Positions 1 to 31,400 of a stretch of 64,000 nucleotides of DNA are shown here, piece by piece. A model generated the notes under the pieces. It saw nothing but the letters and a program-made list of their open reading frames with translations, searched no databases and had not been told where the DNA came from. Origin of the DNA: Haplodiscus bocki (Eukaryota); NCBI GenBank assembly GCA_965655095.1, contig OZ296650.1, positions 133,796,001 through 133,860,000 on the forward strand. The letters are read 5' to 3'. The first letter of the stretch is position 1, and the number at the start of each line of letters is the position of its first letter. Made by a program: the position numbers and the translations under genes.

Positions 1-22
1 CTTTCCCAACCAACATCGTGTT

Positions 23-8183: not shown

Positions 8184-8936
8184 ATGGCTCATTTGATCAT
8201 AACCGACTCTCTGGGCGTACAACTGGAAGGTGTGCTTGAAAATTTGGCAGTTAAAAGTTTTCCTGGCGCCAGAGCGGCGGACCGACGTGTAACGAGTTTC
8301 CTGGAAAATTTGCGGCGCCGCTTCCAATCCATTACAATTTTCATTGGAGGGAATGGCCTTTCCAATTGGGGCCGGCGTCCAGCTGAAAGTCCAGAACAGG
8401 TAAAGCTTAAGTGATGGTTCATGGGGTTACTGTTTGCAAAATCAAATTAGACGCTAGTAAAATTTGGAACGTTTTTGTGTATTGTTAAACCCTTTATTGA
8501 AGTACGTTTAGTAAAAATCTAGGAAAACGTTGTTTTCAATAGTAAGTCTTTCTACTGGTACTTTAACTGGTGCTACTTGCAAACTATAATTGAACCGTAA
8601 CTTTGTGTTTTTAATATCTCAACAGTACTTCATTTGCTTTTGTTGTTTTATTATTAGGTGTTCCATGATATCTTGAACCTTGTGAGAATTGCCGAGAGAA
8701 AATGCGACAAAGTATACTGCCTGGGCTTAGTAATGCGAAGCCGACCGTGCTTCCTTGCAGTGAAAGAAATAAACCGAATGCTGCGAACATCCATTGGACA
8801 CTACACTTACGTTTCCGTGTCATCTAAGATGTCATCTGAAAGAAATCTTAAAGACGGAGTGCATCTGTCTCAGCACGGCGTGACGAACATCCTGTGGATT
8901 ATAAAAAGACGGATTTTAGGTAACAAATGTGTGTAG
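8184..8936 (+). CDS. SGNH/GDSL-type hydrolase, 2 exons (8184-8399, 8658-8936), 164 aa
   Basis: Joining at CAG|GTAAAG (8400) and TTATTAG|GTG (8657) is in frame and assembles all four SGNH blocks: ITDS, FPGA, IGGN, DGVHL. Confidence 0.82.
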
Positions 8937-10378: not shown

Positions 10379-11389
10379 ATGACAACTCAAGTGAACACCT
10401 CCCAAGTAACAGCACCAAATTTTTTGCGACGAAGCGAAAATACATTCGTCAGAGGTATCGTTCTAGTAATTAAGAAATACGACAAACCTTTGCAGTTGTT
10501 TAGACCGCAAAATATCAAAAACAAGAGAGGTGCCCTCGATACCAGCTATGATCGATTAGTCATACTAGGCGAGATCAATTCAAAAGAATGCTTTGCTGTG
10601 ATTGCGGAGTCTGCACAGAAAAGCTATTTTTTGTTCGGGGACACTCTGTTAACAGTAGGGTCAATTGTGGACGTAAAAGAACCTGTGTTCTCGAACTCTT
10701 GTCTCGGCAATGACCGCAGTAATCCAATTTTTCATGTCTTTCTTCCTTTGGAAGTCGTGGTTAACAATATTCCATTGTTGCCAATTCCCATAGATCTCCA
10801 CCCATCAACGACAGCAATGTTTCACTTTTGCTTGCCAAACAGACCCCTCACCTTCTTACAAGCAGGTGCTGTAGCTCCAACTTGCTCAGGCTTCATGTGT
10901 GACAGACGAGAAAAACGAATTGACTCTGTATGCCCCTGTATACAGAAATCTCCTGTTTCAGCTTGGGTAATGTGCGCCCGAATTGTCAGTCGTGACATCG
11001 AAAATGAAGACGAAGATTCCCTCACGGGAGAAATGATACAAAGTCTTAACCTGACAAAACTGTTTTGCAGCGAAGCAATTATTAGAAGTTCATATGCATC
11101 AATCGATTCGCAACAACTGCGGATTGCTGTTAACCAGGTGTCCCAATTTGTAAATGAGAATGGTGGTTGGCAGGTATGTGGATTTTACAAAAGTGGATCC
11201 ACAGACGAAAATCTTGCACAAAACGTACAACGTGTCCGCATTTGCAAAATTACGCCTGCCGTTGAAGTGCCTTTTAACTTGAAATACAACATTGTGCCAT
11301 GCAACGCCAATATTGGCAATGAGCCCCCAGCTTTGCAACATGCGAATACTAACGTCGGTGCTCCTAACAATCCGAACAACGTACGATAG
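10379..11389 (+). CDS. Conserved element protein (~330 aa), putative OB-fold/RPA-like ssDNA-binding protein with Cys cluster
   Basis: Alignable end to end with 13750-14748, 40560-41570, 45789-46781 and 60746-61738 (RGIVL, LQLFRPQ, YDR, LTVGSIV, PTCSGxxCDRR..CxC, NGGW, LQHAN). The OB-fold call is inferred from the strand pattern only. Confidence 0.75.
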   Translation: MTTQVNTSQVTAPNFLRRSENTFVRGIVLVIKKYDKPLQLFRPQNIKNKRGALDTSYDRLVILGEINSKECFAVIAESAQKSYFLFGDTLLTVGSIVDVKEPVFSNSCLGNDRSNPIFHVFLPLEVVVNNIPLLPIPIDLHPSTTAMFHFCLPNRPLTFLQAGAVAPTCSGFMCDRREKRIDSVCPCIQKSPVSAWVMCARIVSRDIENEDEDSLTGEMIQSLNLTKLFCSEAIIRSSYASIDSQQLRIAVNQVSQFVNENGGWQVCGFYKSGSTDENLAQNVQRVRICKITPAVEVPFNLKYNIVPCNANIGNEPPALQHANTNVGAPNNPNNVR

Positions 11390-12418
11390 CTGATCTAGAC
11401 TTACTCCTCAGATGACCGTTCTTTCTCCACCGCATGAACTGCTTGCTGGTTTTCAAAACCAATCTCTCCTTTCGCAATCGACCGCAAGGTGGTTGCTGAA
11501 AAAAACATGCACAAATTAACAAGTTTCGGAAAAAAAGTCAACTGATAAAGTTGTCCTCGTTCTTTCATACCACAATTTGTTCTCCTCCTTTTCAATCTTG
11601 AAACCTATGCTTCAATTTTCTTGTTAATGATAAAGTTTAACTTTCCAGTACTTATCAGTACCCAAAGGTTAATTGTTGGTTTTTTGGAACTGTAAACACT
11701 AATGTCAAATTACAAATTAGTTGTTGTTGAACAATGGAAATTAGTTTGCAACTGCCGACGACTTGTCTCTGTAAACCTACGTTTTTCAGTAGCTTAGAAC
11801 ATTGTGCTAATTCGTGTGGCTTTTGAGTGTGGTTTATTGGTTCGTGTAGAAGTTGTGAACTTTTTATGTTATGCAATTAACTTTTTCTTGTTATGTTAAA
11901 CATTACTATCCGTTCATGACCGAACGTTTTGAACTTTGAAACGCTGGCTTGCTCTTCTATCGGTCGAAGTGCACGCTCTCAGTTCGTTGCTTGACGTTTG
12001 ATACAGTGTTGTAATTTTCGCTAACAGAAGAATGGGATCAAACTTTCATACGAAATTTTAGGGAAATTTTTTTCTGAAGTCCATACAGGTTCATTTGGTT
12101 CATTCGGGTTGTTTTCACAAAGTAACAGCTGGGAACCTACTGCCTACAAATTGACAACATTGATGCGAAACTTTTTGAGAAAGTTAAAACACTTTCGCTG
12201 GTCAAATTTCAAAAGTATTCGTTCGGACAAAAATTTTAGTTTTCCTTCCCAGAAACTCATCAAACTTGAAGTTGTTTGTTAAAGGAACAGTTGCTCTCCG
12301 AGAATTGCGGGCAAAAATTCCTGCCGACGTTTCACCATACGCCTGTTTAAGTGTTATATTCAAATTCTACAGAAAAAATTGATTTTTTTTCTGATTTTTG
12401 TTTTTTTTCCAAAAAATT

Positions 12419-12994
12419 CGTCATAACCGTCATTTTTTTCGGCAAAGTGGCCGAAACTTTTTCATCTTCGGAAAATTGCCTTTGAAGTTATGGAGTCGAT
12501 TTCATACTGGAGCCACTCCAGAGGGCAAACTATGCACTTCAATGTGGGAGCTATGACGAAATGGTCGATTTTCGGCATTTTTTTCCAAATTTGATCCGTC
12601 ATATCTCAACACCTATAACGAGTTGGTAGAAAATTTTTTGCATGTGTGTAGCCCTTAGTTATACTGCTTCACACGAAAAGTTTCGGCCAAATGCATGTGG
12701 TTCCTTGCAGGGCTGTCGGTGAAAAACTGCAAAATGAGGCCAAAAAACAGAATCATCTCGTCATAATTCCCCAACCATTTTTGCTAGAATGATCTAACTT
12801 GCACCATTGTTCTTAGAATTGAAAGTTATGCCCGCATGCAAAGTTTGATCAAAATCGTATGGGTGGGAGCTGAGATCGCTATTTTCCTATACCGTATTTG
12901 CATAGAGTTATTTCTTATATTTTAACGCGAGGCAAAGGGGCCCCTCCCCCGCCTCGCCAGGACCTATGAGGGGCGTAATCCCGTGACCACCCAG
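12419..12994 (+). repeat. Subterminal module R1 (A/C-type) with CGTCAT cluster, hairpin 12927-12957 and terminal CCAG
   Basis: Closely similar to 27890-28466 and 42626-43205. Confidence 0.88.
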
Positions 12995-13001
12995 CGGAGG
13001 C
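12987..13001 (+). other. Unit junction core J1, CCACCCAGCGGAGGC
   Basis: One mismatch to the core found at 26352, 27411, 28459, 44628 and 59585. Confidence 0.8.
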
Positions 13002-13749
13002 TAGGTTACCAACTACCAGTAGAGGCTTTAGCGTATGTAAATTAGAAGAAAGTATTTTAATTTCTTGAAGTCTTCACATAAGTATAATTATTATGATAGC
13101 GACAGCAAAAACCGTCTCGTTGGATTTAAATTTCCCATAGTTTGAAACATTTTTAGGGAATATATGGGAAAATCGTACAAAATGTATCGCCCATTTCGCT
13201 GTGAGTTGTTTATGTTTTCCTTGCATGTAAAAAAAACTGTCTGAAGCTACTGCTACCAGTTTTGATTGTGCTCCAGCGATTACAATTGTTTTTTTTGTTG
13301 CAGTATATGAAATAAACTTTGGTGAAAGAAAATAGTAAACCATATGAGAAAACTTCGTTGTCATCAGAAGCAGTTGATTGTGAGTGGTAAACTAATGTAA
13401 ATTTTTACTCCAAACTCGTAAAACTTCTAATGAAACAGAAAGTTGTTCGAAATGATAATTTTGTCAGATTGAGAAGTGAAAAACTTCAATAATATAATAA
13501 TTCGAAGTACCAATTTTGCATTACTTTATAACCGAAAGAGAATATGGTAATCAATTATTACACTAAATAACCGATTTGTATTGAGAACACAACTACGTAT
13601 TCACAAAGATGCCGCTCAGATTAAAGTAAAGAAAAATATGAGAAGAGTTCTAACAACCAACTAGTTGAAAGCTCTTTTCAACCAATAATGTCCTCCAGTT
13701 ACAACTACAAGAAACTCAACAACAGGATTTTCCAAAATTTCACTGGAAA

Positions 13750-14748
13750 TTAATGTTGTACGTTCAACACATTAGGATTTGCATGCTGTAGAGGTGGTGG
13801 TCCACCGCGTGGTTGTTCCGCTTCGCCAATGCCGTATTTCATGTTGTCAGGCACCTGAACTGCTGAGATCAAACGACAAACTCTGACGCGTTGAACTTCC
13901 TGTGTGATTGATTCGTCGCTCACACTACTTTTAACAAAACCAGAGACTCGCCATCCGCCGTTAGCATTGACGTGTTGAGAAACACGATCAATAGCCTCGC
14001 GCAATTCGCCTACATCGACAGAACTTGATGGGAGACGCAATACATCGTTGGTACAGAAGAAGGACGCGACATGATGACTTTGAGTCATATCACCACTCAG
14101 CGGGTCATCGTCTTCATCATCAACATCTCGTGAGATTATTCGTGTCGACAGGGTCCACGACGAAACAGAACTTTTTTGAATGCAAGCACAAACGCTTTCA
14201 TTCTTCGTCGATCTTCTGTCACAAAGAGTTCCCGAACAGGTTGGTGCCACCACAATTGAGTGCAAGAATGTCAGTGGCCTGTTTGTCAACGTATAATGGA
14301 ACATTGCTGGAGTTGTTGGCGACGTGGAAATGGGTATGGGAGGGAAATCATTGTCATTTAAGTTATTCACAACTGTCAGTGGATGGTGAGTCTCCACGAT
14401 GGGGTTATGCATGTCATTTCCCAGACAAGTGTTAGTGTACAGCGGCTCGACGACATCGACGATGGACCCCACCGTCAGGTAACGATCAGAGAAAAGATTC
14501 GCTGACTTTTGAGCCGACTGTGAAATTACTACAAAACAATCCTTACAGTTCCACTGACCTATTATTGCCATTCGGTCGTAATTTCCTTCAGGGGAAGGCC
14601 TTTTAAGTTTAAGGGTTTGGGGCCGATAGAGCTGCAGTGGACGATCACTTCTTTTGAGCAGAAGTACAATTCCTCGCAAGGTTGTATTCCCACTGATACG
14701 TAAAAAACCTTTCGAGGTCACCTGTGCCAGAGACACTTGACGATTCAT
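13750..14748 (-). CDS. Conserved element protein (332 aa), putative OB-fold ssDNA-binding protein
   Basis: Homologue of 10379-11389; same motifs including PTCSGTLCDRR..CAC and PPPLQHANPN. Confidence 0.75.
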   Translation of the reverse strand: MNRQVSLAQVTSKGFLRISGNTTLRGIVLLLKRSDRPLQLYRPQTLKLKRPSPEGNYDRMAIIGQWNCKDCFVVISQSAQKSANLFSDRYLTVGSIVDVVEPLYTNTCLGNDMHNPIVETHHPLTVVNNLNDNDFPPIPISTSPTTPAMFHYTLTNRPLTFLHSIVVAPTCSGTLCDRRSTKNESVCACIQKSSVSSWTLSTRIISRDVDDEDDDPLSGDMTQSHHVASFFCTNDVLRLPSSSVDVGELREAIDRVSQHVNANGGWRVSGFVKSSVSDESITQEVQRVRVCRLISAVQVPDNMKYGIGEAEQPRGGPPPLQHANPNVLNVQH

Positions 14749-15503
14749 ATCTTAAAAACGCGACGTACTCAAATAATTATTCATAAATTAACTTGTGATG
14801 TTTAATATTTTACTTTTCAAGTTTCAGCGACAGTCTGACCGTTAACTACTTTCAACTAGACAAAAAGTTTCGTTAACCAGACTAACTTTACAACGTAAAC
14901 ACACCTAGGATTGTGCTTTTTATGCATTCAATTCAAAGGCTTTTTTCAAAACACTCGAACTACCTGCGAGACAACAACGAAATCTAATGACTTCAAAGTG
15001 TTTTTCTTACTCCTGCTATCCAATTCAACAGACAACTATACGCTCAACTGCTCATCGATTATTGTCATCCAAGATTAAAAAGTGCTCGGATAATTATAAT
15101 TAAATTTAATTTCCATTTTAAAAATGTAACAGTAATTAGTGGAGAAAAGTAAAAATTCCAAACGCACTCATTCATAAATTCTACAATTTCAGATGAAAAC
15201 ATTCAACATTCTTAGAACAATTCAAGATATCGAAAACACAAAAGTTTGTTTCCGAAAACAAAAGGTGCGGTGTTGAAACACCGACACCTCAACAACAATA
15301 CATTAAGCAATAAAAAAGTCGATGAAAGTCTCCAATGAATGAAAGAAACACGTTCTTTTCAAGTAACACAAGCGGTGAAGAACACCGACGAATCAAAGTT
15401 TCAGTTGGGAACGACATAATTTTATGCGTTGATGGAGGTCAGCACACCACAGTAGAAATAAATTGAAATTTGAGGCTCCACAAGAGCTGTTGTTCAGTAA
15501 CGG

Positions 15504-16389
15504 CTAATGAGATAACCTAGCTTCCTGATAAAAAAAGAAACAAATGAATAAAATCAAAAGGTAGAAAGCTTGTTTCCACGCTCCGCGCGGAAACAAGCAA
15601 CCAATATCTGCACCCAACAAAAAGAACCTATGCTTCTACAGTTAAAAGTATTTTTCTTTGATGCGGAACTGGAAACGTTTTTAACAGCTCTTAATATACG
15701 TCTTAAAGAGACACGTTGAAATGATTTCTCCATTCTCTTGTTAGGTCATTCCGAGCAATTGAATATCTTGCGACCAATGTCAAGAAAATCAATTGTTGAA
15801 GACAAAAAAAATGATAACTATCAAAACCACTAACCCTATTTTCCAAATTTCTTTTCCTGTTAACTGCTCGTTTTTGGGACAGAACAAAAAGACTCTCACA
15901 GAAGATTACTCGTGACACCATGTGAGCTTCTAAAATTGGATTTAAATGCAAATCATTGCCAGGTTGCAGCAGTTTCTTGTACCGTTGTGTGAGAATTGCT
16001 TTGATTTTGATAAACGTGATACCAGCTGGGCAAAATGAAAGATCATCAGAAAGGTCGTGCGCACCACGACGAGGTAAATAGGTGAAGCCAATGACATTGT
16101 ATTGAGTAAGAAGTCGTAACTTTTGAAAAAATTGATACGGGGTCAACGCTGGATTCTTCTTTGAAGAAAGACTGTTATTTACAGCATCATGCCACAAAAT
16201 TATTTTGTTTGATGTCGTTGGAATTTTATGTGTCCTCAAAAGCACTTCAATGTTTTTCTCTTTTTTTGCATGATTTAAAGCCAAACCGGGAACGCTAAAA
16301 ACTTTACTTTGTAAACCTTCGAACAGATGCGGTTTGTCATCCATTGCCCAGTACACAGACGAGGCTGCAACTATCAAATACTCATTCAT
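15504..16389 (-). CDS. Divergent SGNH-like hydrolase, 2 exons (16389-15835, 15524-15504); an in-frame ATG also exists at 16410
   Basis: AASS / PG / HDAVNN / NDLHL blocks. Homology with unit D ends exactly at a shared GTTAGT donor (15834); acceptor TTTTTTTATCAG ends at 15525. The ATG at 16389 aligns with the D start. Confidence 0.62.
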
Positions 16390-17071
16390 TGTCCTGGAAA
16401 GCTCCTCCATGTGTTAGTACTGAACCAAAAAAGTTCAACTTCTAATCAAAGAAAAGAAGTAAATGAAATAGAAGATGCGTTTAGTAAACTTCAGGGCCCA
16501 GAAAACTGTGAAATGACAGAAGTTTTTATTACAAACACTTTGCAACTTTCACAACTGTTCTCCATTTAAGTATGAACAACTCAAATTTGTTGAAAAAACA
16601 TTCCTTGGAAAAATAATTTTTTTATCATTTAACGTGCAACCACTAGTGCATTCAATCCCAACCAAAAACGATTGGACGCCTCTTCAATCCTCTATCGCCT
16701 TCATAAGGAACTAGCAGTTTAAACAACAATCAATTGAAGTTTTTAATCGAGAATGATCAAAAGGCTATGGATAAAAAGTGTTTCTGATGTAATATACATA
16801 CTGGCAATTCAAATAAAAAACAGTAAATGATTAATGCACAGAATGGTTTTCAAAGCTGAGAGAAGATAATAGGTTGCCGTGCAACCAAAGAAAACAATAG
16901 GTTTGCGGAAGTTTTTTGGAACTGCAAACATTTTGAAGAAATCAGCACGAAGTACACAATAAATACGAAGCGGATGGAAACTTTTCAAGAAAGGTTGCTG
17001 TGCAACCAAAAATTGACACCTATCAACAGAGTTAACATTCAGTGAAGAAGAAACGTTGACATTGATTGAGT

Positions 17072-20000
17072 TCAGTTTGTTCCGCCATATACAGACGTTT
17101 TCACAAGGCATTCGCACCGCAACGACCCCTCTACGTTAGTACAACGATACAAATCAATTAACACTTCGCATTCGCTCAGATAGTCAGCAAGTTTCAGTTG
17201 CACAACGTTTCTTTTTCTGCGAGACATCGCTTTCTGCCAGTCCACTTCGAATGAAGACAAAGAATTTCCGGTTACATCAGCGAAGCCATGCACATAAGCA
17301 ATTACTGTCCAGGGACGACGAGGTATGGGCTTTGTAAACTCACTTCCGTGCCCGGAATTGTGTTCATGAACACGCCGACGAAGGTTTTTGCAGCGACCGA
17401 CGTAAAACAAATGAGGCAACTTCAAACTCCTCAGCAAATAGCAGAAACCAAACGAAGTGTTAGGTATTTCGCTAAACCGCAAAGGAAACGGGCTTAATGT
17501 TTCTACAGAGCTCAGATTGCTTCCCATATCAGTGTAACTGTCCAGTAGGCTATTGATGAAAGGCAACAGATGGTTTTCCTTGACTAAAGTGTTGTCAATG
17601 CTTTTCATCGTGGCTAATCTGTCGCCCACGAAAGTAATATGACTGAGATCTCTGACACGACTAAGGAGGACGCACAGTTGTTCTTTGGCCCAAAACTTGA
17701 ACTTTCGGAAATCAGTTATTTGAGTTGCAATCATCGGGACAGTATCACCCATTACTTTGTGAACAGTAGATGCCACGTACATTTTTAAAGGAAACTGCCA
17801 TCGCCGGCAAACTGTGGAGGCGTTCAGCTTGAACAGGACACCCATTTGTCTCCTCAGTTTAACTTCTCGCCAATTCAATGAACTAACATTTGTAACTAGA
17901 GTAGATCTGAAACCTGGAGGAGCCACTTTAACTGTAATAGTGCCGCAGTATGTGTCAAAACTTTTTACAAAGCAAAGTTGTCCTTGCTGCAAATTTTCAG
18001 CTGGTAAATTACGGGTTAAGCGAAGCACGGCACCTTCGTGGACAAATAGTTGCTGGGGCTCCGTGCAAACACGGTTCAAGAAAAGAGAAGCTGTCACGTT
18101 AGCTGGAACCCAATTTTGAGTTCCAGAGGGAGTCATTTCGTCAACGGCAATGAAAGTTGTGTTCGAAACATTGCCACTACTTCGCACAGCCTCTATTCGT
18201 TCGTCAACTGCCTCCCGTTCAGCTAACCGAGTGCTAAAAACTCGTAAACAATGCATGGGAACTTCAGACCATGACCTCACAAAATTACAGTTCTGCTCGA
18301 TTATTGTTAACACTTCATTTCGGATAGTTTCAGTGGACGGATACGGGGCAATTAGGTCGAGGAGTCTTTGCCCGGCTATGTTGATCATTCGCACATACGA
18401 TTTTAGGTGATAAAAAGTGAAACACGTCAACACGGTGTTACTGCGGAGTAAGAAAGTACCGGAAGGAGGTGGTAACTGACGGAAATCTCCACTACAAACC
18501 AAAAATTTCCCACCAAAAGGAAGACTGTTCCCACAAACACATTGCAATACAGAATCCATGGAAGACCACAATTCGGCTGAAACCATTGACACCTCTTCTA
18601 TGAAAATAACATGAACTCTTTGTAAATACTTGCATTTAACTGGATCCCTGCACAATTTTTCTAGGGCATATGAAGTCATCTGGGAAACCGATGCGTTATC
18701 ATTTACGGGAAACGGAATGAGAGCATTTATGTGCAAACCACCAAAAATTGAAGCCCTCTCAGCCGCCAGACTGGTAACCACACAATTGAAACCTTTTGCT
18801 AGGGCTGCAGCTATACAGTGAATCAGAACATGACTTTTACCGGTTCCAGGTGGCCCAACAATCACTTGGTGCTTCACAAAAAATGAGGTACTCTTCTGAA
18901 ATGTATTCATTGTCTCCAGAATCAACTGCAGTATTCGACGTTGATCGGACACAGATTCAATTGTCTGAAGTGTTTCTTGGTATATTTGAGGCTGCCAATT
19001 CAAAGGACTGCTCAGAGAAGCCGACATGAATTCATTGAAGGAAGGGAAAGTTGTCGGGCTTTTCTCCATTAAGGCTGCTACTAAGTTACTTTTCAGTCTA
19101 TTGCTTTCTTCTAAAACTTGTTCCTCTGCTTTCTGGAAAATTGAGGACTCCAGAACAAGGGGTAAATCTTTGCAAAAGGTTAGAAGATTGTTTTGTGTAG
19201 CTTCCTTTAAACAGTGATACGCCGTTCCAACATGCCTGTCCAAGAGGGTTGACGAACCGGGGTAAAACCGCAGTTGCTCCATCACAAAACGCTTAGTCAA
19301 TGAAACAACTTCCTCATCGGTGGCTCTTTCAGTTGACGAAATCAGACCACTGTAGACGAATGCAGACTTCAAGGACAAATGGGAAAACAAATCAATTTCA
19401 GTGCTATACTCACCAAAGGAGAGAAGATAATGAATGAGAAAGTTTGATGTACTTTTAGGCACAATTGTTGATAAAACAACTTGCACTAGTGGAAAACTCA
19501 AACTCTCGTTTATGAAGTGGGACTTGTTTGGTTTTCGTAAACATTCAAGTGCTTCCCTTGCTTGCCGGACATAATGACTGTTGTTGCTTTGGAAATTCTC
19601 ACAGTAACTGATTAACGCTGTTAAATAATGCATGTTGACTGTAACTTTGAAACCAAAACCGTCAATCCAAAACGAACAGGAAATATCTGGTTTTATCATC
19701 GATTCAATGGACGCAGTTGGTGACACCTTGGTGCGGACGAACCAAGTGAAATATTTCTCTATAGTACGCAGGAACAAAAGTTCTGGAGGTCGTGCAGAAA
19801 AAGCTGTTATTTTGTCATAAGACACAGAACTTTTCTCAGCATCAACAATGGTCCATTCTTGTGTCTGTGTGAAAAGTCTATGAGAAGGGAGCTCAAGGTT
19901 TTTTCGCAGAAGAACTTGCTGACCATACAAAGGACCCTGCTTAGCAGGACGTATCATCCGCTCTTTCACAATACCAGCTCTTTTCTCTTTGGGAGTTGTC

Positions 20001-23000
20001 ACTACGTGAATGAAGTGAATGTTTGAACAAACATAAGGAAACTTCAGAAGCCACCACGCCGACTCTGTCAAGCTGATAGCCCTTCCAGTCAAAGTTTTAC
20101 GCTTTCGGCAAGAGCTTTGGTTCTTTGACCAGCGAACTCCGCTTATTTTTTCGTTTGACTGATCCTCAACGTTGTAGCCAAAAGTTGCATCAGTGGAACT
20201 ACTGTAAAGGTTTACGGTACTTCGTTCTTCTATTCCCGCAGCGTACTTGGCCAAATACCTTGCACTCATATAGACGTCACAAATCTGTAAATTTGTACTT
20301 GACCGAACCAAAGCGAAAATTAGGGCGTTCGTTGGCGAAAAATGGGTACCTTTCTCTGACGGATAATGATGTTTACCACCACGTAGCTCATCAATGAGAA
20401 ACAACTGACCGGTCACGGAATCTTCAAACGCAACATTCAGTTTTCGTAGAATATCCCATGTCTCTTTGGATAAATTTTTCTCGACTTCCTTGTAGGAAAA
20501 AGCGACACTGCTTGGATAAGCTGGAACTCTGCAAATTGACTTTTGTAATCTGTTCGATTTCTTGTGGCAACGCATTTTTGCTTTCCTGCAATTATGACTT
20601 TGGTATTTTTGAAACAAGATCTGCAAATCTTCTTTCTCCTCCGGTGAAAATTTTTCCGATCCCACTTCCGCGTTCAGATTACCTAAGAACGTTGATGAGC
20701 TACAACAAACTCTCGATCGAACTTTTTCGCTGAAAGCATTTTCTGAAGTCCAGATAAGAGCATGGATATGTGGGAAGGCACTTGTTTTATCTTGAAATTC
20801 ATAACGATACCACAACTTCCGTACTCTGCCTAACGGACGTTCCGTAGAAGTTTCGATGTACTTCATCACGAGTCGGGAACTGCGTTCCCACGCTCGTAGC
20901 ATTGTTATCATTTCAGCTTGAACCGCAGAATTTCGAACCTCCGAGCTGGTTATTGTTTCAGGGTATTTCTCTTCCAAAGCTTGAAAAATCTTCCGTACCC
21001 CAGGATGAGTAGACTGACTGCAAGTGTAAGTAAAAAAATAGGTTGCAGGTTCATCCTTCAATGCAGCACTAAGTTCATTGACATTTTTTCTTGAATCACT
21101 CTGATCGAAGTGCATAGCTCCTTCTTTGACGCATTGGCCACTTACGTTTTTGTCAGAATCTTGTCCCCAGCCTCTGTTCAACACCAATCTAGTGTCTTTT
21201 CCACGCAAATCTAAATTAAAAACCGAATCAAAAGCGTACTGGATGTATCTGGGATCGGATGCCGTTAACAGAGATCCATCTTTGACTCTTGTACGCAGCA
21301 TATCATCTAAGCTTGCAAAACCAACTTTGGCATTGCTATTCTTGTTGTTAAACAACGAAGCAGGTATAGCACCTGCGTAACTGCCGTCCTCATTCTGTTT
21401 CCAAAAAATAGTTGGGAACATCATCGCCTCTGGTTGAATTAGTGGTACCGAATTACACGGGCTGGTAGCTGTAACATTCTTCAACAGTCTTTTGTGTCTT
21501 GCAGTCACGTAAATGGGAGACCCTTTACTACGTTTCAGAAGGCCACACTGACCATTCAAAAGAATATGCAGAGGTAAATTGAAATTGGTGTCCGTCATTA
21601 CAGGTTCCCTGACATAGCTTGGTTCCAGTGCAGCATCCGTTGCTTCCGGTAATGTCAATTCCGAAGAGTCTGTGTGTTCATTCAACAATCCTGCATCCAT
21701 TAGGAAATCACTTTGAGACGTTGACGATGAAGAGACAGAGTTGCTCCACACACCTCCATCTGAAAGATTTTCCTCGCTGACACTCCTGCCGTAGCTACTG
21801 TCACCACTGATGCTCCTTGCAGCTTTGTCTCCATCGTTCTCAGACTTCGGCTCAGATTGGTTGTAACAGACAGAAGCGATGTCTTCTGAAGACGATGTGA
21901 ACGGCAACTTATCTGTTCGCCTCAAATTCGGAACATCCGCAAGATTGTCTTGCTGCATTACGTCTTTCCGACAAAGACAAGAGGTGCACTCGTTAACTGG
22001 ACATCGGAGAAACGAAACACGACCACATTCACAGTAATAACCGCTTCCAGGAAAATCTCTGGTTAAAGGCAGCAAATGTTCCTCACAAAGAAACTTCCCT
22101 TGTCCAGTGAGTGTTTGGAAATAATCAAGTTTCAATTGTTTGGTGGTTTGCGTTTGCACAAGGTAATAAATTGCGACATCCCAATGACCTTTAGTGTGAT
22201 GGTCGACGGCCTCCAACGGTGGAAGGTTAACACGACTAGCAAACGGTCTCTTGTTCTCGTAAAGCCAAAATTTATCAAAAGAACCTCCATGCCTCACAAG
22301 CGATATCCTGCTAATGTTATCTGTCAACTTCGAAATGCACCTCAACTCGTAGTCTCTATCGTCAACAGTTATGGCTATGGGTGGGCAACTTTTATTGCGC
22401 AAATTTTTTCCTGCTGGGCTTGTAACAATAACAGTTTGGGTCGAGCTTTGAAGTGAACTCTCAAAAGCAACAACCATTTTCGACTTGTCCTTCAAGGGAC
22501 AATGTGAAACTTCATCTAAAGCTGATGTCAAACTTTCCGCAAACATTACCGCGGGAAACTCACTGTGTGAATTGACTTCAAAAATTTTGGAAATTTCGGC
22601 CGTTAAATTGACGCTACCAGTCCAATCCTTCCGACCAGAAAAAACAACAGGTTCCAAAAATTTCAAAATGGGAACAAGATTGGGAGTGGACATACAAGCT
22701 GACGACAATTGATCGCAAAGAGGTGGAGAGATGCAAAACGCTGTCTGTAAAAGAAACATCAGTTCAGAAGTTCTACAACTGATCTTAGGAGGAAGGGCGC
22801 CAAAGAAATTGTTACCATGGGCGAAAGCCAAAGATTTGAATTTAGCGCAAAGAGAGTTCTCCAGAGACACACCCAATGATGACATCAGAGATGAAGAAGA
22901 CTTCAAAGAGACACTTGTTGTGGAGAGCAAAGATTGCACAGCTAATCTCTCGTTGGGACGAGACAAAGTCTGCTGTCGAATTTCTTGAGATATTTCCTTG

Positions 23001-25252
23001 GAATCAACCAAGTTTTGTAGTAACACTTGTATATCTGGTCTGAAAAAAGAACACTGCGCCTCCGCTTTAACCAACAACTCCGACGTGAGCATCCAATTTC
23101 GCTTGGACGTTAATGATATACTGCTTATTCCAGAATAGTTACCAACAGCCTTGAGCAATTGGTATGTATGGCTCGAATAATTAGCCTTGACGTTTTTTAT
23201 GAGGCGCAAAGTTGGCATAATTAAAGCTAACCTGTCTTCACAAGGCACGCTCAATCTTCCCAGTTGGGGATGTGTAGGTGGATGTAAAAACTGCAAATTT
23301 GAACCATTGTGGTGATCAAGACAAGTGCCAATAACAAGACCCTTGGAACAGTGTACGAAAGCGAAAGCAGAAACTTTGAATTTTTCCAGAACATTGAAGG
23401 GGGTGCTCCAATCTGATCTTATTCCACGAAAATGACAGTTGAAAGACGACTTGAAGGACACAAAACTGGGCATCAGTCCATTGATGAGATGATGAAACGG
23501 AATGAAGCCAGTTTCCTCAACGAAAGTGAAACAACCGAAGGGACATCGACAATTGGGATAGGCTTCTTGATCCAGTGCTTTTTCCAACCGTTCAGAAGAT
23601 CCCGAATCAATATGAGCATCGAAAATTGACCTTCTCTGTGTGGTGTCGGACACCAACGAAGGAACATTTTGTTTACGTATGGATGGATGTAGATGATTGA
23701 AACGATGCTTTCAACTTTGCCTTATCTCCGAAGGAATCATTGCATACAGAATTTTCACCTCATCATCCGAAAGTGAAGTGTCATGAATGAGGCTACTTAA
23801 AACGGTGGGCCAAGCGTCCTTCCAAGCGGCTGTGCTGCACTGCAAATATCGCAGACAAAATTGGCAAACTTTTTGACCAACACGACAATTGCGCCCAAAT
23901 TTTTTCTTCCGCCCGCCAACATTTTCCAAAACAAAGAAAAACAATTCGTAATACTTCGTCGATCTTCGCAAACAATTGGCACATTCTAGGTCCCCAACAA
24001 CAATCTGTGAATCACTATGAGAAGTGGTGTGGGAAAAAGCAACCGCTTCACAAGAGTCTACTGTGACTTCTGCTGATTCATTGAGTTGTGGTGAATTCTG
24101 CCGAAAAGTGGTCGTTGCAACAAATGAGGGAATGAAGTTAGATAACGCTGGCAGCGGTAAAGTTTCGAAATGTGCAGACGAGCTCCTGTTGTGTTTTTCC
24201 ACTTCATGATTACTCAAATTTTGCCTTTTTGCAAAACTTGAAATTACGTCGAAATGATTTCCTGAAATACTGTGACGAACAAAAATCGACGGAATATCCA
24301 AAGCATTTCGGTCACCTTGATACTCATAAACAAACCACGAAGAGGTCATAGTGTGATAAACCACAACATCAACTCGAGCCAGCTGTGCAAATGTGAAAAG
24401 TTCAACGCACGTTCCAAATACACCATCCGTACCCATGCGAGACACTTCCAAATAACTGTTGACATTCCGACAAGAAATTGCTCTGACACCTGGCCCTCCA
24501 GGAACATAAGCTTCCAAAAATTGGCTTTGTAAGCCAACACTGGGTAAATGGTAGCAAATAGCAGCCCGTATGAAAGCATGGTTTGTTGCATGCGAACCGA
24601 TAGCTACAGAAAGTGCAGAAAAAAGGCAATTTCCGTCTCCTGGAACATCAACACAACTTCCAGGAACCAAATCTGACAACGGATGTTCATCAATCAAAGT
24701 CGTTGGGAGAAACAAACCTTGAAAACTGACTCCCAGCTTATTGCAAACATGCTGTAGACTATGCTGACTTCCAATGATTTTTCTACCCTTCGAAATTACC
24801 GAATACAAATTTGCTTCCAACAATGGATCAGCATCTGATGACAGCGGAGTTAATGTAACATTCGAAATATTCGCCAATTTTGGACTTTTCAAACACTTGC
24901 ATTCCCCTTTCCCTTTGAAACAACCGCACCACACACACTGCTCAGTCACATTGGCACGTCGCCTCTTCGTACCTGGGCCAGGGTTCAATTCCAATCCTCC
25001 ACGAAAAAGAGCTAACACAATAAGACGTCTAGTTAAGCTTGAATCGTTGCCACCACAAAATTGAAGTTGTCCTTGAACGCAACACGCCGATTGACCACTG
25101 CGGTAATTTCGTTTCTCAATGCAGAAACCACCGAATAACGACACCGTGTAATTATGTGTCTGAGACAACGTTTGCAAACTTTTGTCACTTGAGAAAATTG
25201 ATGTTGAACACCAAAAAAACAAAAGCATTGTTAAACAACCGTAAAAATCCAT
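17072..25252 (-). pseudogene. RepHel polyprotein of unit B (leader + 2A-like - OTU - Rep - Pif1-like - GIY-YIG), interrupted by one in-frame TGA at 23711-23713
   Basis: ORFs 23711-25252 and 17072-23656 share a frame; the TGA replaces a Trp conserved in A, C and D. Motifs: GDGNCLF/NHFD, YEFQDKTSAFPHIH, YLAKY, GPPGTGKS, IEEVSM, FCYLL..YVG..RRRVHEHN. Confidence 0.85.
24974..25000 (-). other. 2A-like (StopGo) motif GGLELNPGP
   Basis: Preceded by hydrophobic LIVLALFR and followed by basic TKRRR. Positionally conserved with SGIETNPGP in unit D. The canonical Asp is replaced by Gly. Confidence 0.6.
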
Positions 25253-25740
25253 TGAAATCTACAAAATAATCCAACTAAAAAAGGGAATAGATTAACATAT
25301 CCAATGATCATTCGCAAATCGGAATAAGCAATAGCGCTTCTGGGCTGCAAAATCAATACAAAACTTTACACATTTAAATGAACAATGTTAGTAATGTTTT
25401 TGAGAAAACAAAGTTTACTAGCATGTTCATCATATGTCACGTCACAGCATTCAGCATCCGTGACTTAAATATACATCAGAAAGCCGAGAACATTGCAATA
25501 GCATTCGCATGCTACCTTCAAAACCTACTTTTGATCACACTTTGTAGAAAAATTAAAATTTTGTCAACACGCACAACATGTTTGCATAAGTTTTTAATCC
25601 ACTAATTTTATAAATGTGTCTGATCCAAAAAACCTTCAAAAAAGTCGAGAAAAACTTTTTAACAGTCCGTAGACCGTTGTTTAGTATCTTTTAACTAAAA
25701 ATACAAAAAAAATCAGCTAAAATTTTTTTTTTCGAAATGT

Positions 25741-26359
25741 CGTCATGACCGTCATTTTTTCGTTTTAATCGTCATTTTTTCGTCATAACCGTCATTTTTA
25801 TCGTCATTCTGAGCGAAAAAAAATTGTCGTCGAGAAAAAATCTTTCAATCGGTGTGAATTGTTCCGCTGTCCGGCAGCCCTAGATGTCAATGTTGATACT
25901 TCGACAAGGGAGAAATGACGGAATGACCATTTCTTTCAAATTTTCTATCAGTTTCATCCGTCATATCTCCACTTTTATGACGAGTTGGCGGAAAATTTTT
26001 TGCATGCGGATAACTCACAGTCAACATGCTTCACACACACAAAGCTAGCCCAATGCGTATGGTTAGTTGTGGAGATTGGGCCAAAAAACTTCGGTAAGGG
26101 GCCAAAAATGACGATCATTCCGTCATAACTCCTCCCGCAATGAATCAATCATGACGGGACCTACAACAAAATTCTTAGAATTAAAAGTTATGGCCACATG
26201 CAAAGTTTGAACAAAATCTAATGGTTGGAACGCGAGATCGCCTTATTTAGCCCCCCCTACGGACGGTTACTATTTGCTACGCACTATATTTTAAGCTCGG
26301 CGAACGGGTCCCTTCCCGGCCTCGCAGATTGTTAGTGGGGTATCACCCTGACCACCCAG
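25741..26359 (+). repeat. Subterminal module R2 (B-type), about 12 CGTCAT/ATGACG copies, two hairpins, terminal CCAG
   Basis: Nearly identical to 26801-27418 and more distantly alignable to R1, R4, R5 and R7. Confidence 0.88.
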
Positions 26360-27418
26360 TGGAGGCTAGGGTACCAATTACCAGAGGAGGCCTAACTGTA
26401 GGTACATTTTTCCCTGAATACAATTTGTTCAAGTTTAATATTTTTTGATCCATGAGTATTGATGTTTACATTTTTGCTATTGAGTCTTCTACTGTTTTGT
26501 GTTCCCCTCAGCAAAGAATATTACATGACTCCAAATGTTTTTATTGTGGTCTGAGCCCGTTGTTCATCCGATTAGCTACGCGCTAATCTCCCGAACAACG
26601 GGAAATATCAAATTTGAAAAGAAAATCCGTCTTTGAGAAAAGCTGTGGTTCACAAAAAAAGACAACTCCAATGAGTTATGAAAGTCGTTAGAAAATCAAA
26701 AAACGTTTGTGTACATCACTGCATCACATGTAACTATTTTCATTGTTTTCCACACGTTGAAACATAAAGTTTTATGAAGTTTCTTTTTTTTTGAAAAATT
26801 CGTCATACCCGTCATTTTTTCTTTGTAACGGTCATGTTTTCGTCATATCCGTCATTCTTTTCGTCATTCGGAGCAAAAATTTTTGTCGTCGGGAAAATTT
26901 GTTTCAATTGGTGTAAGTTATTCCGCTGTCCGGCAGCCCTAGATGTCAATGTTGATACTTCGAAAAAGGAGAAATGACGGAATGACCATTTCTTTCAAAC
27001 TTTCTATCAGTTTCATCCGTCATATCTCCACTTTTATGACGAGTTGGCAGAAAATTTTTTGCATGCGGATAACCCACACTCGAAATACTTCACACACAAA
27101 AAGCTAGCCAAATGCGTATGGTTACTTGTGGAGATTGGGCCAAAAAATCTCGGAACTGGGCCAAAAATGACGATCATTCCGTCATAACTCCTCGCCCAAT
27201 GAATCAATCATGACGGGACCTACATCAAAATTCTTAGATTTAAAAGTTATGGCCACATACAAAGTTTGACCAAAATCTAATGGTTGGAACGCGAGATCGC
27301 CATATTTAGCCCCCCCTACGGACGGATACAATTTGCTACGCACTATATTTTAAGCTCGGCGAACGGGTCCCTTCCCGGCCTCGCAGATTGTTAGTGGGGT
27401 ACCACCCTGACCACCCAG
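26360..27418 (+). mobile_element. Short non-coding unit S1 (1,059 bp), non-autonomous, B-type ends
   Basis: Left end TGGAGGCTAGGGTACCAATTACCAG resembles B's left end; right module 26801-27418 resembles R2. Flanked by cores at 26352 and 27411. Confidence 0.8.
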
Positions 27419-28466
27419 TGGAGGCACCGGTGAAAATCACCAGGTGGCGGTCACTGGATATACACCTCTGAAAAAGGAAAAAAACTACTAGTCTTTTCCT
27501 CGAACACAGTATTGATTTTTGCAAACGCATGTTTTATACATTGAAATTGAGCCGTTGAAATCTTCGTTGATATCAAAAAGACATCGATGATGAAACTTGC
27601 GAACGCTTTGGCCCCGTTGTTTCTCCGTGCCGCTTCGCTAATCTACGAAACAACGGGGCGGGGCAATTAACAATTTGACTTTTGAGATTTTCCCCCTCAA
27701 TTTTAGACCAAATTAAATATTACTTTTTTCCCAGAAAAACTTCAAAACTTCAGCCCACAAAAGATGCTAAACTTCAAAAGGCTGCACATTAAGACAATTC
27801 TGAAGAAAAACTGGCTGAAAAAATGCCAGATTTGAATTCTTTAATGAAAACTGTGTTTTTGAAAATTTTCATTTTTTTTCTGAATTTTTCGTCATAACCG
27901 TCATTTTTTTCGGCATACTGGCCGAAAATTTTTTATCGTCAAAAAATTATCTTTCAAGATATGGAGTCAATTTCATACTGGAGCCACTCCAGAGCGCAAA
28001 CTAGGTAATTCAATGTGGGAGCTATGACGAAATGATCAAATTTTGGCCTTTTTCTCCAAATTTGATGCGTCATATCTCTACACTTCGGACGAATTGGTAG
28101 AAACGTTTTTGCATGTGTGTAGCTCTTAGTTATTCTGCTTCACACAAAACGTTTCGGCCAAATGCATGTGGTTACTTGCAGGGCTGTCGCTTAAAAACTG
28201 CAAAAAAGGGCCAAAAAACAGAATCATCCCGTCATAATTCCCCAACCAGTTTTGCTAGAATGATCTAACTTGCACCATTGTTCATAGAATTGTAAACTAT
28301 GCCTGCATGCAAATTCTCATCAAAATCGTATGGGTGGGAGCTGAGATCGCAAATTCCCTATACCGTACGTGCGTATTTGTTATTTCTTATATTTTAACGC
28401 GAGGCAAAGGGGCCCCTCCCCCGCCTCGCCAGGACGTATGACGGGCGCAATCCCTTGACCACCCAG
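27419..28466 (+). mobile_element. Short non-coding unit S2 (1,048 bp), non-autonomous, A/C-type ends
   Basis: Left end TGGAGGCACCGGTGAAAATCACCAG resembles C's left end; right module 27890-28466 resembles R1 and R5. Flanked by cores at 27411 and 28459. Confidence 0.8.
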
Positions 28467-31400
28467 TGGAGGCGACGGTGAAAATTACCAGAAGGCGGGA
28501 TTTTCTGCATCCAATTTTTTTGCTGCATCATTTCTGGTGATTGGTTCTTTTTTCTAAAGGGTTGTTTTTATAAAAGGAAACTGTTGTTTTTTTATTTACG
28601 ATACCTTACTCCAGGCTGAAGAATAGCTCACACGACGCGGTACAACTGATACATGGATACATGGACAGTTTGTCTCACACCGTAAGATTGCGTTTTTTCC
28701 GCAAAAGGTATAGTTTTGTAGACTTTTTAAAAGTTGACAACAGCAGCAATGAAGGATGGCAAACATACTTTCTGGTCGATTTTTACACAAACTCAGGTCA
28801 AAACGGCGCTAATGTAACAAATTTTTAAAGTTGTCAGCTGCAGAAATAATATTTAACTTCACCCATTTACCCGTGACCGACTTACATAACAATGAACGTT
28901 TTCATTGAATAACCTTCCCATTTGTTTAATCCGGAATTTTTCAAAGAAATCATTGGCTTGCAGAATGGGTGATGTACCTGAAGCATTTCTTGGTGGTCCT
29001 CCATACCGTTTTTTGTTCTTCAGAGAAACAATATTGGTGTTGCGGGCTCGTCCACGTCATTTGGCCTTTTTCATACATGAAAAAGTACAGTTAGGTGTTC
29101 TGTACCAGAGAAATTCATGAACAAAAAGTTCCGCGCCAAAACATTTCATCCATTATGTAACTATTTTATTCATGCACCGTTCAAAACGCATTAAATACGT
29201 TTAATGCGTCCAGAAGCAGAACAAAAGGATTAATGGTAACTAGCCATTTTCATCATTGACTTGAGACACTTGTCTCCATTGTCTCCATCAAGTCATCGTC
29301 AGCCATAGATTATGACAAGTTAAAGGCCACTTTGATGACGTATCAGTGCTGATAGTAGACTAAATGTGTGTCTTTCTTTTGTCAAGTGGTGAAATTCGTG
29401 CTTTGATTTTCCTGATTTTCAGCTTTTACCAACAATAAACGTGGTTAGTGAAAGGAATCGAAACAGTTTCTGAAGGTATCATGCTCAGTTAAAACGATGC
29501 TTCTTTACTATTGATGACTTTCAAGAGTGGTTTCGATTTTAAGAATTTTTTTCTTCTACAGACCGAACCAGAACTGTCGCGTTTCACAAACGTTTTTGCG
29601 TGAGGTTCTTGGAAGAGGCTATTCGGTCGGTTCCGACGCATACATAACGGAGTTTTACACTTATTCCAAAATAACTTTTGAATTTTGTGTGAAAAATTAC
29701 TTGTTGTCAGATAAAATGATCAGCGAACGAGCATGTTATGGATACGTTTTATTCTTGTGAAGTTTTGTCGAGGTTTCTTTTTGGATATTGCGTTTTTATA
29801 TCAAATCGTAAATTGTTTCACGTGAACTCGGCATCGCCAATTTCCAATCCCGCATTTGAACCCTTTCATGTAGATACTTTTTCGTATGTGATAGAAACGT
29901 ATGAACTGTTCATCCTGTAATTCCTGACTCACTGAAGTCTCAACTGATTTTGGTGAACAATTTTTGGCTTGTGTCGATAAATTCGGCGCATTAACTTTGG
30001 TAAATTACTTTGCTAACGTTTTCCTGGGAGAAGAGTGCTGTGTAACGCTTGTCAGAATCGCTGGCTGACTACTAATACTTTTCAATAATTTCTAAAACTA
30101 AAAGGGGGACTACGCTGTTATCATCGTACATGAAATGTTGAAATAGTTAATGGCGCATTGGAGACGTGGGAAATTGAAAAGTAAACAAAATAATCGTTAC
30201 TTTTAATGTATCCCCTTGGTTGCCAACGTTGACTGGCATTAGAGGAACAATTTCTACAGGTTCAACAAAGTTGAGCATATTATTGGTTTTGCTTAGGAGG
30301 AGAACTTGCTTTCATTTACTTTTTAACCGCCTGCGGCCTAAACACCGGTCACGTAACATTTAGTGTTCGCCATTCGTTAGCTGGTGAGTTTGGTGTCAGT
30401 CATGCGGTAAACTGAAAACAAGGGATAATTTCTTAGACAAACAGACCGTTTCCGCTGTCAGTGCGGGAATGAAAGATTACGTAACGTTCTTGTTTCACGC
30501 TTTTCAAATAAGGGTTTTATCTCTTTTCAACTGAGCAGTAAAACGCTGTAACATGATATCCTACTTTGTTCAACAGTTCAATGTCAGTTTAATTTAAGCT
30601 AATTTTTCATGTTCATTGCTTTAGATATATTTGCTGTTCTTATCGCCAACTACAGGACGGTTAAGTTTCCAGCAGTAAAAAGCAAGCTTCAGATTGATTG
30701 CCATTGTAGTCAGCTTGAAGTAAAGGCAGATAATTGTGTAGTCTGTGTCATTATAGGAAAATTCTTCATGATTTTCGGGTGCTCATTAAAAATAACGTTC
30801 GAATATATGAAAGGCAGAATAAACTTGAGTATTTTTTTGTTTTTGGTTGTGCTGTGCTGGCAGGGAAGAAAATGATGCAATTTTGCGTGTATCTGCAAAA
30901 GTTTATTTTCGTTTTTGTTTGTGTTTGCCAATTGTCACCATATTGAGTAAATTAATGACAAAAAGTGTGTTTCTCGTGCAGTTGTGTGAATGGTCTCTGT
31001 TTCATTCCACGTCAAAAGGGGGAAGTAATCGGCTGGTACCAATTATCGCAAGTGAAAGTTTTTGGGGAATTTTGACATACGCCTCCTTCCTGTAGGAGTT
31101 TGCTGGTTTTTGTTGCAGACCAAAACTTGCGACCTGAAGCCAAAGATTTTATATCGGCTTCTCTTTCTTGAAGGGTTAATTTGGAAAGTAGTTTATTGCT
31201 TCTTGTAAATGTTTAGAGACTTTCATTGTGTTTTCTATGTGCTTTGCCTGTAGGACTTTTGCTATTTGATGTCGGCACGAGTGAAGCACTATATGTAAAA
31301 GGCATCTTCCCAAAGCCTTGGTTTCGCTCAGAGGCCTTCGCAAAACCAAGGCGCTTCTGTTTTTCATTATTCAATTCGCAATGGAAACTGTAACCGTTAT

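What the first reader, a model, noticed from the sequence alone, without database searches (positions are those of the whole stretch)
12995..26359. Gene cassette occurs in both orientations relative to the same terminal module
Seen: in A and C the RepHel>(SGNH)>330aa cassette is transcribed toward the hairpin/CYAG end. In B, D and E the same gene order is transcribed away from it, while the termini keep + polarity. B and D are also closer to each other in protein sequence, so the flip marks a lineage. Established: canonical Helitrons have the hairpin+CTRR end downstream of RepHel. Inference: an ancient inversion of the whole cassette was tolerated, so the replication/transfer polarity is uncoupled from transcription.
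Basis: partly seen in the sequence, partly recalled or inferred. Interest (0 to 1): 0.72.

Follow-up and report, generated by a model that had tools for sequence, protein, structure and literature searches.

The report
Helitron-like transposons with flipped gene block
Two sister lineages of giant rolling-circle (Helitron-like) jumping genes sit head-to-tail in one chain and carry their genes in opposite directions between the same kind of ends; this is real, but such flips are already reported in related elements, and here A/C is the flipped lineage, not B/D.

Summary
The window is a one-way chain of Helitron-like units: A, B, S1, S2, C, S3, D, E. Every unit runs from a 5' end CCAGYGGAGGC to a ~600-bp subterminal module ending in GACCAC, always on the + strand. 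The OTU-Rep-PIF1-GIY-YIG gene and the 330-aa gene read towards the module in A and C and away from it in B, D and E. The same relation holds in all 11 genomic neighbourhoods sampled and in a second assembly. No reversed ends lie inside B or D. A full D unit sits exactly in a joint of a short-unit array, next to identical empty joints, so the refuting scenario fails.

RepHel proteins form clades (A,C) and (B,D). All five outgroup lineages tested have the B/D arrangement, so A/C is the flipped lineage, with one change on the tree. Both lineages keep the HUH motif and evolve under purifying selection. Terminal modules do not follow the protein tree (AU p about 5e-5), so ends are exchanged among co-resident families.

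ORF reversal relative to the termini is already published (FoHeli4/5, Helentron-Da-40, 'HLE2-reverse'). This is a new, well-resolved example.

The parts
1..12990 (+). Unit A (its 5' end lies about 4.04 kb before the window). The OTU-Rep-PIF1-GIY-YIG frame is 23-7606 (+) and the 336-aa gene is 10379-11389 (+). The terminal module is 12394-12990. Genes read towards the module (sense).
12985..13030 (+). Joint A|B: GACCAC|CCAGCGGAGGC. The B 5' end carries two copies of a CYAG-nGGAGGC 11-mer, 25 nt apart.
12991..26355 (+). Unit B (13,365 bp), polarity + by its ends. All its genes are on the - strand.
   Evidence: Full-length copies at 96-98% identity on C11 (three) and C5 (partial). Two have non-element DNA left of the 5' end.
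13750..14748 (-). B 332-aa gene, 53% identical to the A 336-aa protein and 69% to that of D. No Pfam family.
15703..16410 (-). A homologue is present in D and E and absent from A and C. No Pfam support.
17072..25252 (-). B OTU-Rep-PIF1-GIY-YIG gene. This copy is split by one in-frame stop at 23711-23713. The C11 copy has an open frame of 2722 aa. The HUH motif is FPHIHALI.
25724..26355 (+). B terminal module with CGTCAT/ATGACG clusters, two short GC-rich palindromes and the end GACCAC. It lies about 470 bp upstream of the B gene start, on the opposite strand.
26356..27414 (+). Short gene-less unit S1. Its module is 91-92% identical to that of B.
27415..28462 (+). Short gene-less unit S2. Its module is 87-88% identical to that of A.
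28463..43202 (+). Unit C with genes on + (31638-32945, 32824-37992, 37999-39708, 40560-41351). The RepHel frame is interrupted. The module is 42600-43202.
43203..44631 (+). Short unit S3 of another family. Its 5' end begins with CTAG and its module is 44046-44631.
44632..59588 (+). Unit D (14,957 bp) with genes on - (45789-46781, 47688-48341, 49683-57691 in three overlapping frames). The module is 58972-59588.
   Evidence: Full-length 99% copies on C1, C6 and C23 with an open frame of 2780 aa.
59589..64000 (+). Unit E, 99% identical to D and cut by the window end. Genes on - (60746-61738, 62682-63335).

Best explanation
These are Helitron-like rolling-circle transposons of a GIY-YIG-bearing branch. 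Each unit is defined only by its ends: a 5' end CCAGYGGAGGC, and a 3' ~600-bp module ending in GACCAC. Units land seamlessly, in one direction, in the joint GACCAC|CHAG between units that are already there. This builds one-way chains of mixed families. Recognition, nicking and transfer depend on the ends (inferred), so the direction in which the internal genes are read is free to differ. The ancestral layout of this branch has the genes antisense to the ends, with the gene start next to the module, as in B, D and E. One inversion of the whole cassette gave the sense layout on the stem of, or within, the A/C clade. Both layouts stayed autonomous and active. The ends themselves are exchanged among families living in the same genome. 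The likely route (inferred) is read-through of a 3' end into the next unit of a chain. That exchange is why sense and antisense families share 'the same' module.
For: Polarity of the ends versus the genes. Same relation at 11 loci. Exact boundaries and mobility of an antisense unit: on C23 the repeated short-unit joint ...GACCAC|CTAGACGTGC... is empty nine or more times and once holds a full 15-kb D unit. On C6 the D unit sits between a short-unit 3' end and the 5' end of another family, and that same joint is empty at C23:24436. The B 5' end abuts non-element DNA on C11 at two sites. A BD-clade element in another assembly (L041) shows no other module or end motif within the 10 kb read on either side. 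No reversed module or 5' end lies inside B, D, A or C. The RepHel tree gives AC and BD as sister clades (SH-aLRT 96-100) with outgroups outside them. Sense orientation: A, C, P0008. Antisense: B, D, P0001, P0004, P0014, P0037, P0018, P0017, P0028. That is one change on the tree. Function is kept in both states: the HUH motif is conserved, PIF1 and GIY-YIG domains are present, and dN/dS is 0.19-0.26 for D subfamilies, 0.07-0.13 for A versus C and 0.45-0.56 for B copies. Module exchange: co-resident pairs are more alike (A/C-B 62-65%, P0008-P0004 72%) than pairs matched by protein clade (B-P0001 51%, D-P0004 50%, A-P0008 55%). AU tests reject protein-congruent module clades at p 5e-5 and 4e-5.
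Against: No experiment shows which strand is nicked, or that each family moves itself. Four AC-clade relatives (P0010-P0013) could not be scored. One partial - strand module at the edge of L039 hints that the flip may lie inside the AC clade rather than on its stem. Chains have uniform polarity, so a module near a gene may belong to a neighbouring unit; unit limits in L037 and L038 are less sure. The P0008 copy in L033 has a degenerate upstream end. Module alignments at 50-55% identity are near saturation. The clades tested were defined by the protein tree, but I had already seen a first module tree. How the inversion happened left no detectable trace.
Confidence: 0.75

Rival explanations
1. 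B/D cassettes are complete elements with their own ends, inserted backwards into short units. The + strand ends around them would then belong to the host unit.
For: Chains are full of short units, and B is always followed by an S1-type unit. The published model for ORF reversal starts this way (PMC5148889, Fig. 8).
Against: No - strand module or 5'-end motif lies inside B or D. The B left part shares only about 40 nt of 5' end with S1 and nothing else. D is delimited exactly by + ends in joints that are empty elsewhere. The antisense layout is shared by seven lineages outside this genome.
Confidence: 0.03
2. B/D is the flipped lineage and A/C keeps the ancestral, canonical layout.
For: Canonical Helitrons have the hairpin end downstream of RepHel. 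Within the window alone the four families give an unrooted quartet that cannot tell direction.
Against: All five outgroup lineages scored are antisense, so this reading needs several independent flips instead of one.
Confidence: 0.1
3. Only one orientation class is truly autonomous. The other is carried along and moved in trans by the first class's transposase, using the shared module.
For: Modules are shared and exchanged between classes. Short gene-less units with the same modules are clearly moved in trans.
Against: Both classes keep 2.7-kaa open frames in many young copies, keep the HUH, PIF1 and GIY-YIG motifs, and have dN/dS well under 1. The 5' ends are family-specific beyond the first 11 nt.
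Confidence: 0.1
4. The apparent flip is an assembly error in a repetitive region.
For: The region is a long repeat chain. D and E are 99% identical.
Against: The same layouts recur at 96-99% identity on C1, C5, C6, C11 and C23 with different neighbours. They also recur in an independent assembly, ERZ25074608. There are no N runs in the window.
Confidence: 0.01

Closest known systems
FoHeli3 versus FoHeli4/FoHeli5 of Fusarium oxysporum (Helitron2-like; Chellapan et al. 2016, PMC5148889)
   Same: Related families with similar termini carry the transposase ORF in opposite orientations. The authors propose a nested reverse insertion followed by loss of the inner ends. Tandem copies and multiple ends are also reported.
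   Different: Those are fungal 5-11-kb elements with 12-16-nt asymmetric terminal inverted repeats and no GIY-YIG. They form no long mixed chains, and the direction of the flip was not polarised with outgroups. Here no significant terminal inverted repeat is found.
Helentron-Da-40 of Drosophila ananassae and 'HLE2-reverse'/proto-Helentron (PMC4067079, PMC11417382)
   Same: The Rep/Hel gene is on the minus strand relative to the termini, with the stem-loop end upstream of the gene. The papers report this as an exception within Helitron2/Helentron-type elements.
   Different: Helentrons carry an AP endonuclease and insert at T|T. Here the nuclease is an SLX1-like GIY-YIG domain and insertion is at CCAC|CHAG. 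In this branch the 'reverse' layout is the rule and the 'forward' one is the exception.
Helitron tandem arrays and 3'-end bypass chimeras (bat, maize, silkworm; cited in PMC4067079 and PMC5148889)
   Same: Head-to-tail clusters occur, distantly related elements lie directly next to one another, and new 3' ends are acquired by read-through.
   Different: Here the chains are made of several families joined at one invariant nucleotide position. Full units are found in joints that are empty in neighbouring repeats.
Bacterial HUH single-strand transposons IS91 and IS200/IS605 (from my own knowledge, not tested here)
   Same: The ends, not the genes, define the transferred strand. A short target tetranucleotide abuts one end. 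Gene orientation varies among IS200/IS605 members.
   Different: They are prokaryotic and small, lack a fused helicase, and no homology was tested.

Membership tests
Helitron-like elements (HLE) in the broad sense | One protein with a Rep (HUH) nuclease domain followed by a PIF1-type helicase | tested here: met
   Helitron_like_N and PIF1 are found in A, B and D. For C only the C-terminal fragment was scanned, and it has PIF1 and GIY-YIG. The HUH motif FPH[LIV]H is conserved in A, B, C and D. Helraiser matches only weakly, and only in the helicase region (E 4e-5).
Helitron-like elements (HLE) in the broad sense | No target-site duplication; insertion at a fixed short site; head-to-tail joints | tested here: met
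   Occupied and empty joints differ by exactly the unit and show no duplication.
Canonical Helitron (HLE1) | 5' TC, 3' CTRR, insertion between A and T | tested here: not met
   The 5' end is CCAG or CTAG, the 3' end is GACCAC, and insertion is between CCAC and CHAG.
Canonical Helitron (HLE1) | Short hairpin about 10-12 nt before the 3' end | tested here: inconclusive
   A GGGG-N5-6-CCCC palindrome ends about 8 nt before the 3' end in most families, and a second GC-rich palindrome lies about 30 nt upstream. Fold energies are not better than shuffles (z -0.1 to -1.6). RNAalifold keeps only 4 pairs, one of them covarying.
HLE2 (Helitron2/Helentron) | 12-16-nt asymmetric terminal inverted repeats | tested here: not met
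   Only a 5-6-nt GCCTC core is shared between the reverse complement of the 5' end and the 3' region (p 0.1-0.97 against shuffles).
HLE2 (Helitron2/Helentron) | Insertion between T and T | tested here: not met
   Insertion is at CCAC|CHAG.
HLE2 (Helitron2/Helentron) | DUF6570 marker domain (HELIANO paper); AP endonuclease for Helentron proper | tested here: not met
   Neither appears in Pfam scans at E up to 1. A GIY-YIG domain is present instead. An OTU domain lies upstream, as in some HLE1 and HLE2.
HLE2 (Helitron2/Helentron) | RepHel groups with the HLE2 reference proteins in a tree | not tested
ORF-reversed Helitron-like elements (FoHeli4/5, Helentron-Da-40, HLE2-reverse) | Related families share homologous ends of the same polarity but have the transposase gene on opposite strands | tested here: met

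The most novel reading that the evidence does not exclude
The GIY-YIG RepHel elements are a separate, essentially undescribed branch of Helitron-like elements. Three of its features are shown here. Its default layout is antisense, with the gene start beside the 3' module. It targets the joints of existing chains (CCAC|CHAG). Its terminal modules are exchanged among co-resident families whatever their gene direction. If the nicked strand is the same in both layouts, this branch offers a natural paired experiment: sister families in one genome whose transferred strand is the coding strand in one and the template strand in the other.
Probability: 0.3. Interest if true: 0.6.

Novelty: new member of a known kind. 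Interest (0 to 1): 0.36.

Why it matters
It gives a clean, polarised case that rolling-circle transposition in Helitron-like elements does not depend on the direction of transcription. Two sister lineages, both young and under purifying selection, use homologous ends in one genome. Outgroups show which layout came first. The incongruence between the end-module tree and the protein tree shows that ends and genes evolve as separable parts. This matters for annotation tools that pair RepHel genes with termini by assuming a fixed orientation. The general phenomenon is already in the literature, so the gain is detail and a good test system, not a new principle.

Tried and rejected
1. Solo ends and empty joints showed the joint is GACCAC|CHAG.

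2. I searched for remnants of inner reversed ends: local alignments of the left and right non-coding parts of B, D, S1, S2 and C in both orientations, motif searches, a 13-module profile on both strands of the window and nine other loci, CGTCAT cluster mapping, and a comparison of the A and C leaders. Nothing was found. The few - strand profile hits lie inside modules, whose centre is partly palindromic.

3. I first read D copies on C6 and C23 as solo insertions. The profile search showed they sit in long short-unit arrays, which then gave the empty-joint evidence.

4. Terminal inverted repeats of the HLE2 kind are not significant.

5. The hairpin was not supported by energy or by a consensus fold.

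6. P0010, P0011, P0012 and P0013 could not be scored. No module lies within 10 kb except one partial hit at a locus edge, and a GACCACC site near L031:8980 is not convincing.

7. Pfam gives nothing for the 'SGNH' and 330-aa proteins.

8. Three malformed calls gave no result (26, 74, 75).

9. No structure prediction, complex prediction or large representative search was run, because the question did not need them.
Full report
ANATOMY. The window is G000:C3:133796001-133860000 of a 1.5-Gb eukaryotic assembly. Large open frames lie on + at 23-7606, 10379-11389 and 31638-41351. They lie on - at 13750-25252, 45789-57691 and 60746-63335. The giant frames carry Helitron_like_N, PIF1 and GIY-YIG, with an OTU-like N-terminal part. 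The GIY-YIG part matches SLX1 structures, and Helraiser matches only weakly in the helicase. Self-comparison and a multiple alignment show a ~600-630-bp module repeated only in direct orientation.

ENDS AND BOUNDARIES. I compared copies elsewhere in the genome. This shows that homology between copies of one family starts at CCAGYGGAGGC and stops at GACCAC.
- B-type units on C11 have ordinary DNA directly left of CCAGCGGAGGC at two sites.
- A-type and D-type units end at GACCAC followed by CAAG, CTAG or CCAG.
- The best evidence is on C23. A short-unit array repeats the joint GACCAC|CTAGACGTGC many times, and one such joint holds a complete 15-kb D unit with nothing duplicated or lost.
- On C6 the D unit lies between a short-unit 3' end and the 5' end of another short family. 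That same joint is found empty at C23:24436.

The units of the window are therefore A (to 12990), B (12991-26355), S1 (26356-27414), S2 (27415-28462), C (28463-43202), S3 (43203-44631), D (44632-59588) and E (from 59589).

THE OBSERVATION. A profile built from 13 modules finds them only on the + strand of the window. The few - strand hits fall inside modules. Exact 5'-end motifs are all on +. Genes read towards the module in A and C and away from it in B, D and E. The relation is not local. At C3, C4 (two loci), C9 (two loci), C11 (two loci), C5, C23, C1 and C6, A-type genes share the strand of the modules and B/D-type genes are opposite. Full-length B and D units recur at 91-99% identity with the same layout. 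It is not an assembly artefact.

THE REFUTING SCENARIO. No reversed module, reversed 5' end or CGTCAT cluster lies inside B or D, nor in the leaders and trailers of A and C. B shares with S1 only the first ~40 nt and the module. D moves as one unit bounded by + polarity ends. In another assembly a BD-clade element (L041) shows no other module or end motif within the 10 kb read on either side, and its gene is antisense.

WHICH LINEAGE FLIPPED. RepHel identities are 68-82% for A-C, 51% for B-D and 37-48% across the pairs. The 330-aa proteins follow the same pattern. A word search found 57 relatives, nearly all with GIY-YIG. The tree of 53 proteins gives an AC clade (A, C, P0006-P0008, P0010-P0013) sister to a BD clade (B, D, P0001-P0005). 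P0014 branches next, followed by the P0037, P0018, P0017 and P0028 groups.

I fetched 12 loci and scored the strand of the modules against the gene.
- Sense: P0008.
- Antisense: P0001, P0004, P0014, P0037, P0018, P0017 and P0028.
- Not scorable: P0010-P0013.

Together with the window units this needs one change on the tree, on or within the AC branch. So the layout that looks canonical is the derived one.

BOTH LAYOUTS WORK. Open frames of 2691 aa (A), 2722 aa (B) and 2780 aa (D) exist in young copies. The HUH motif is kept in all four families. dN/dS is 0.19-0.26 between D subfamilies, 0.07-0.13 between A and C, and 0.45-0.56 among B copies. The window copies of B, C and D are themselves interrupted.

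ENDS AND GENES ARE SEPARABLE. Module identity is higher between co-resident families of different protein clades than between families matched by protein clade. A/C-B is 62-65% and P0008-P0004 is 72%, against 51% for B-P0001, 50% for D-P0004 and 55% for A-P0008. AU tests reject module trees in which the sense modules, or the BD-clade modules, form one clade (p 5e-5 and 4e-5). The P0008 module is nearly identical to short units that lie beside an antisense element. I infer that 3' modules are passed between families, most simply by read-through into the next unit of a chain. So 'the same module in both orientations' reflects exchange as well as descent.

COMPARISON WITH WHAT IS KNOWN. ORF reversal relative to the termini is published for FoHeli4/5 versus FoHeli3. 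That paper mentions a zebrafish Helentron, a D. ananassae Helentron and a Chlamydomonas Helitron2, and proposes nested reverse insertion followed by loss of the inner ends (PMC5148889). It is also published for Helentron-Da-40 (PMC4067079) and as 'HLE2-reverse' (PMC11417382). A GIY-YIG domain in a Helitron-like element is mentioned once, for a Sphagnum family.

By its ends, the present branch fits neither HLE1 nor HLE2:
- no TC or CTRR ends and no A|T site;
- no significant terminal inverted repeat;
- no T|T site;
- no DUF6570 domain.

Its place in a tree with reference proteins was not tested.

MECHANISM, WITH STATUS.
- Shown: the polarity of the ends, the gene directions, seamless joint insertion of an antisense unit, one flip on the tree, purifying selection, and module incongruence.
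- Inferred: the transposase acts on the ends alone, the same strand relative to the ends is nicked in both layouts, the chains grow by joint targeting, and modules spread by read-through.
- Unknown: how the inversion arose. The published nested-insertion model fits, but no trace is left.

VERDICT. The phenomenon is a new example of a known kind.

Earlier notes of this scan on other pieces of the genome describe the chains and joint insertion (s1-369312, s1-382610) and the same opposite-orientation pattern (s1-369450, not followed up). I tested these points independently here.

Noticed in passing
C23 piece (L016/L026/L027) and C6 piece (L007/L021/L008); in the window, the joints at 12990/12991, 26355/26356, 27414/27415, 28462/28463, 43202/43203, 44631/44632 and 59588/59589: Units of at least seven families are joined at one invariant position, GACCAC|CHAG. 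A 15-kb unit sits in a joint that is empty in the neighbouring repeats. This implies insertion targeted to existing joints, in one direction.
   Followed up: partly
modules at window 12394-12990, 25724-26355 and 58972-59588, and modules in L030, L033 and L041: The terminal-module tree conflicts with the RepHel tree. Modules are most alike among families of the same genome (AU p about 5e-5).
   Followed up: yes
window 12991-13030, 26356-26395, 44632-44670: Each 5' end holds two copies of an 11-mer (CYAG-n-GGAGGC) about 25 nt apart. These may be paired transposase binding or nick sites.
   Followed up: no
window 12394-12990, 25724-26355, 26784-27414, 27865-28462, 42600-43202, 58972-59588: CGTCAT/ATGACG hexamers cluster in the modules and nowhere else in 80 kb (43+31 sites against about 12 expected per strand). 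The module centre matches its own reverse complement weakly.
   Followed up: partly
window 43203-44631: Short unit S3 belongs to a different family. Its 5' end starts CTAGGGAAAGACAG, and it contains a GC-rich palindrome (GGCGGGCGGCCCCGCCCGCC). The same family follows units on C5 and C6.
   Followed up: no
window 15703-16410 and 47688-48341 (-): The 217-235-aa gene called SGNH is absent from A and C. It is present in basal AC-clade relatives (L031, L034), so it was lost in A/C. It has no Pfam match. Conserved AASS, WHDAxNNS and DLH blocks are only suggestive of an SGNH hydrolase.
   Followed up: partly
A leader (L009/L022, about 4.04 kb before the window, to window 22) and C leader 28463-31637: In the sense families, 3.1-3.5 kb of non-coding leader lies between the 5' end and the gene start. 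Beyond the first 38 nt it is not conserved between A and C. In the antisense families the gene start is only 0.5-1.3 kb from the module.
   Followed up: partly
G000:C3, about 133.74-134.30 Mb: The window is part of a chain region of at least about 550 kb. It holds many A-type (+) and D-type (-) copies and runs of 1.05-kb short units, all with + polarity ends.
   Followed up: no
L031 18.5-20.1 kb, L039 18.1-18.6 kb, L040 18.4-19.1 kb: A minisatellite (period roughly 50 nt, judged from the staggered BLAST hits) lies just downstream of RepHel in the P0010/P0011/P0013 lineage.
   Followed up: no
window 23711-23713 (-), 37993-37998 (+), 55903-57691 (-): The window copies of B (one in-frame stop), C (interrupted frame) and D (three overlapping frames) are damaged. 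Copies elsewhere have intact frames of 2722 and 2780 aa.
   Followed up: partly
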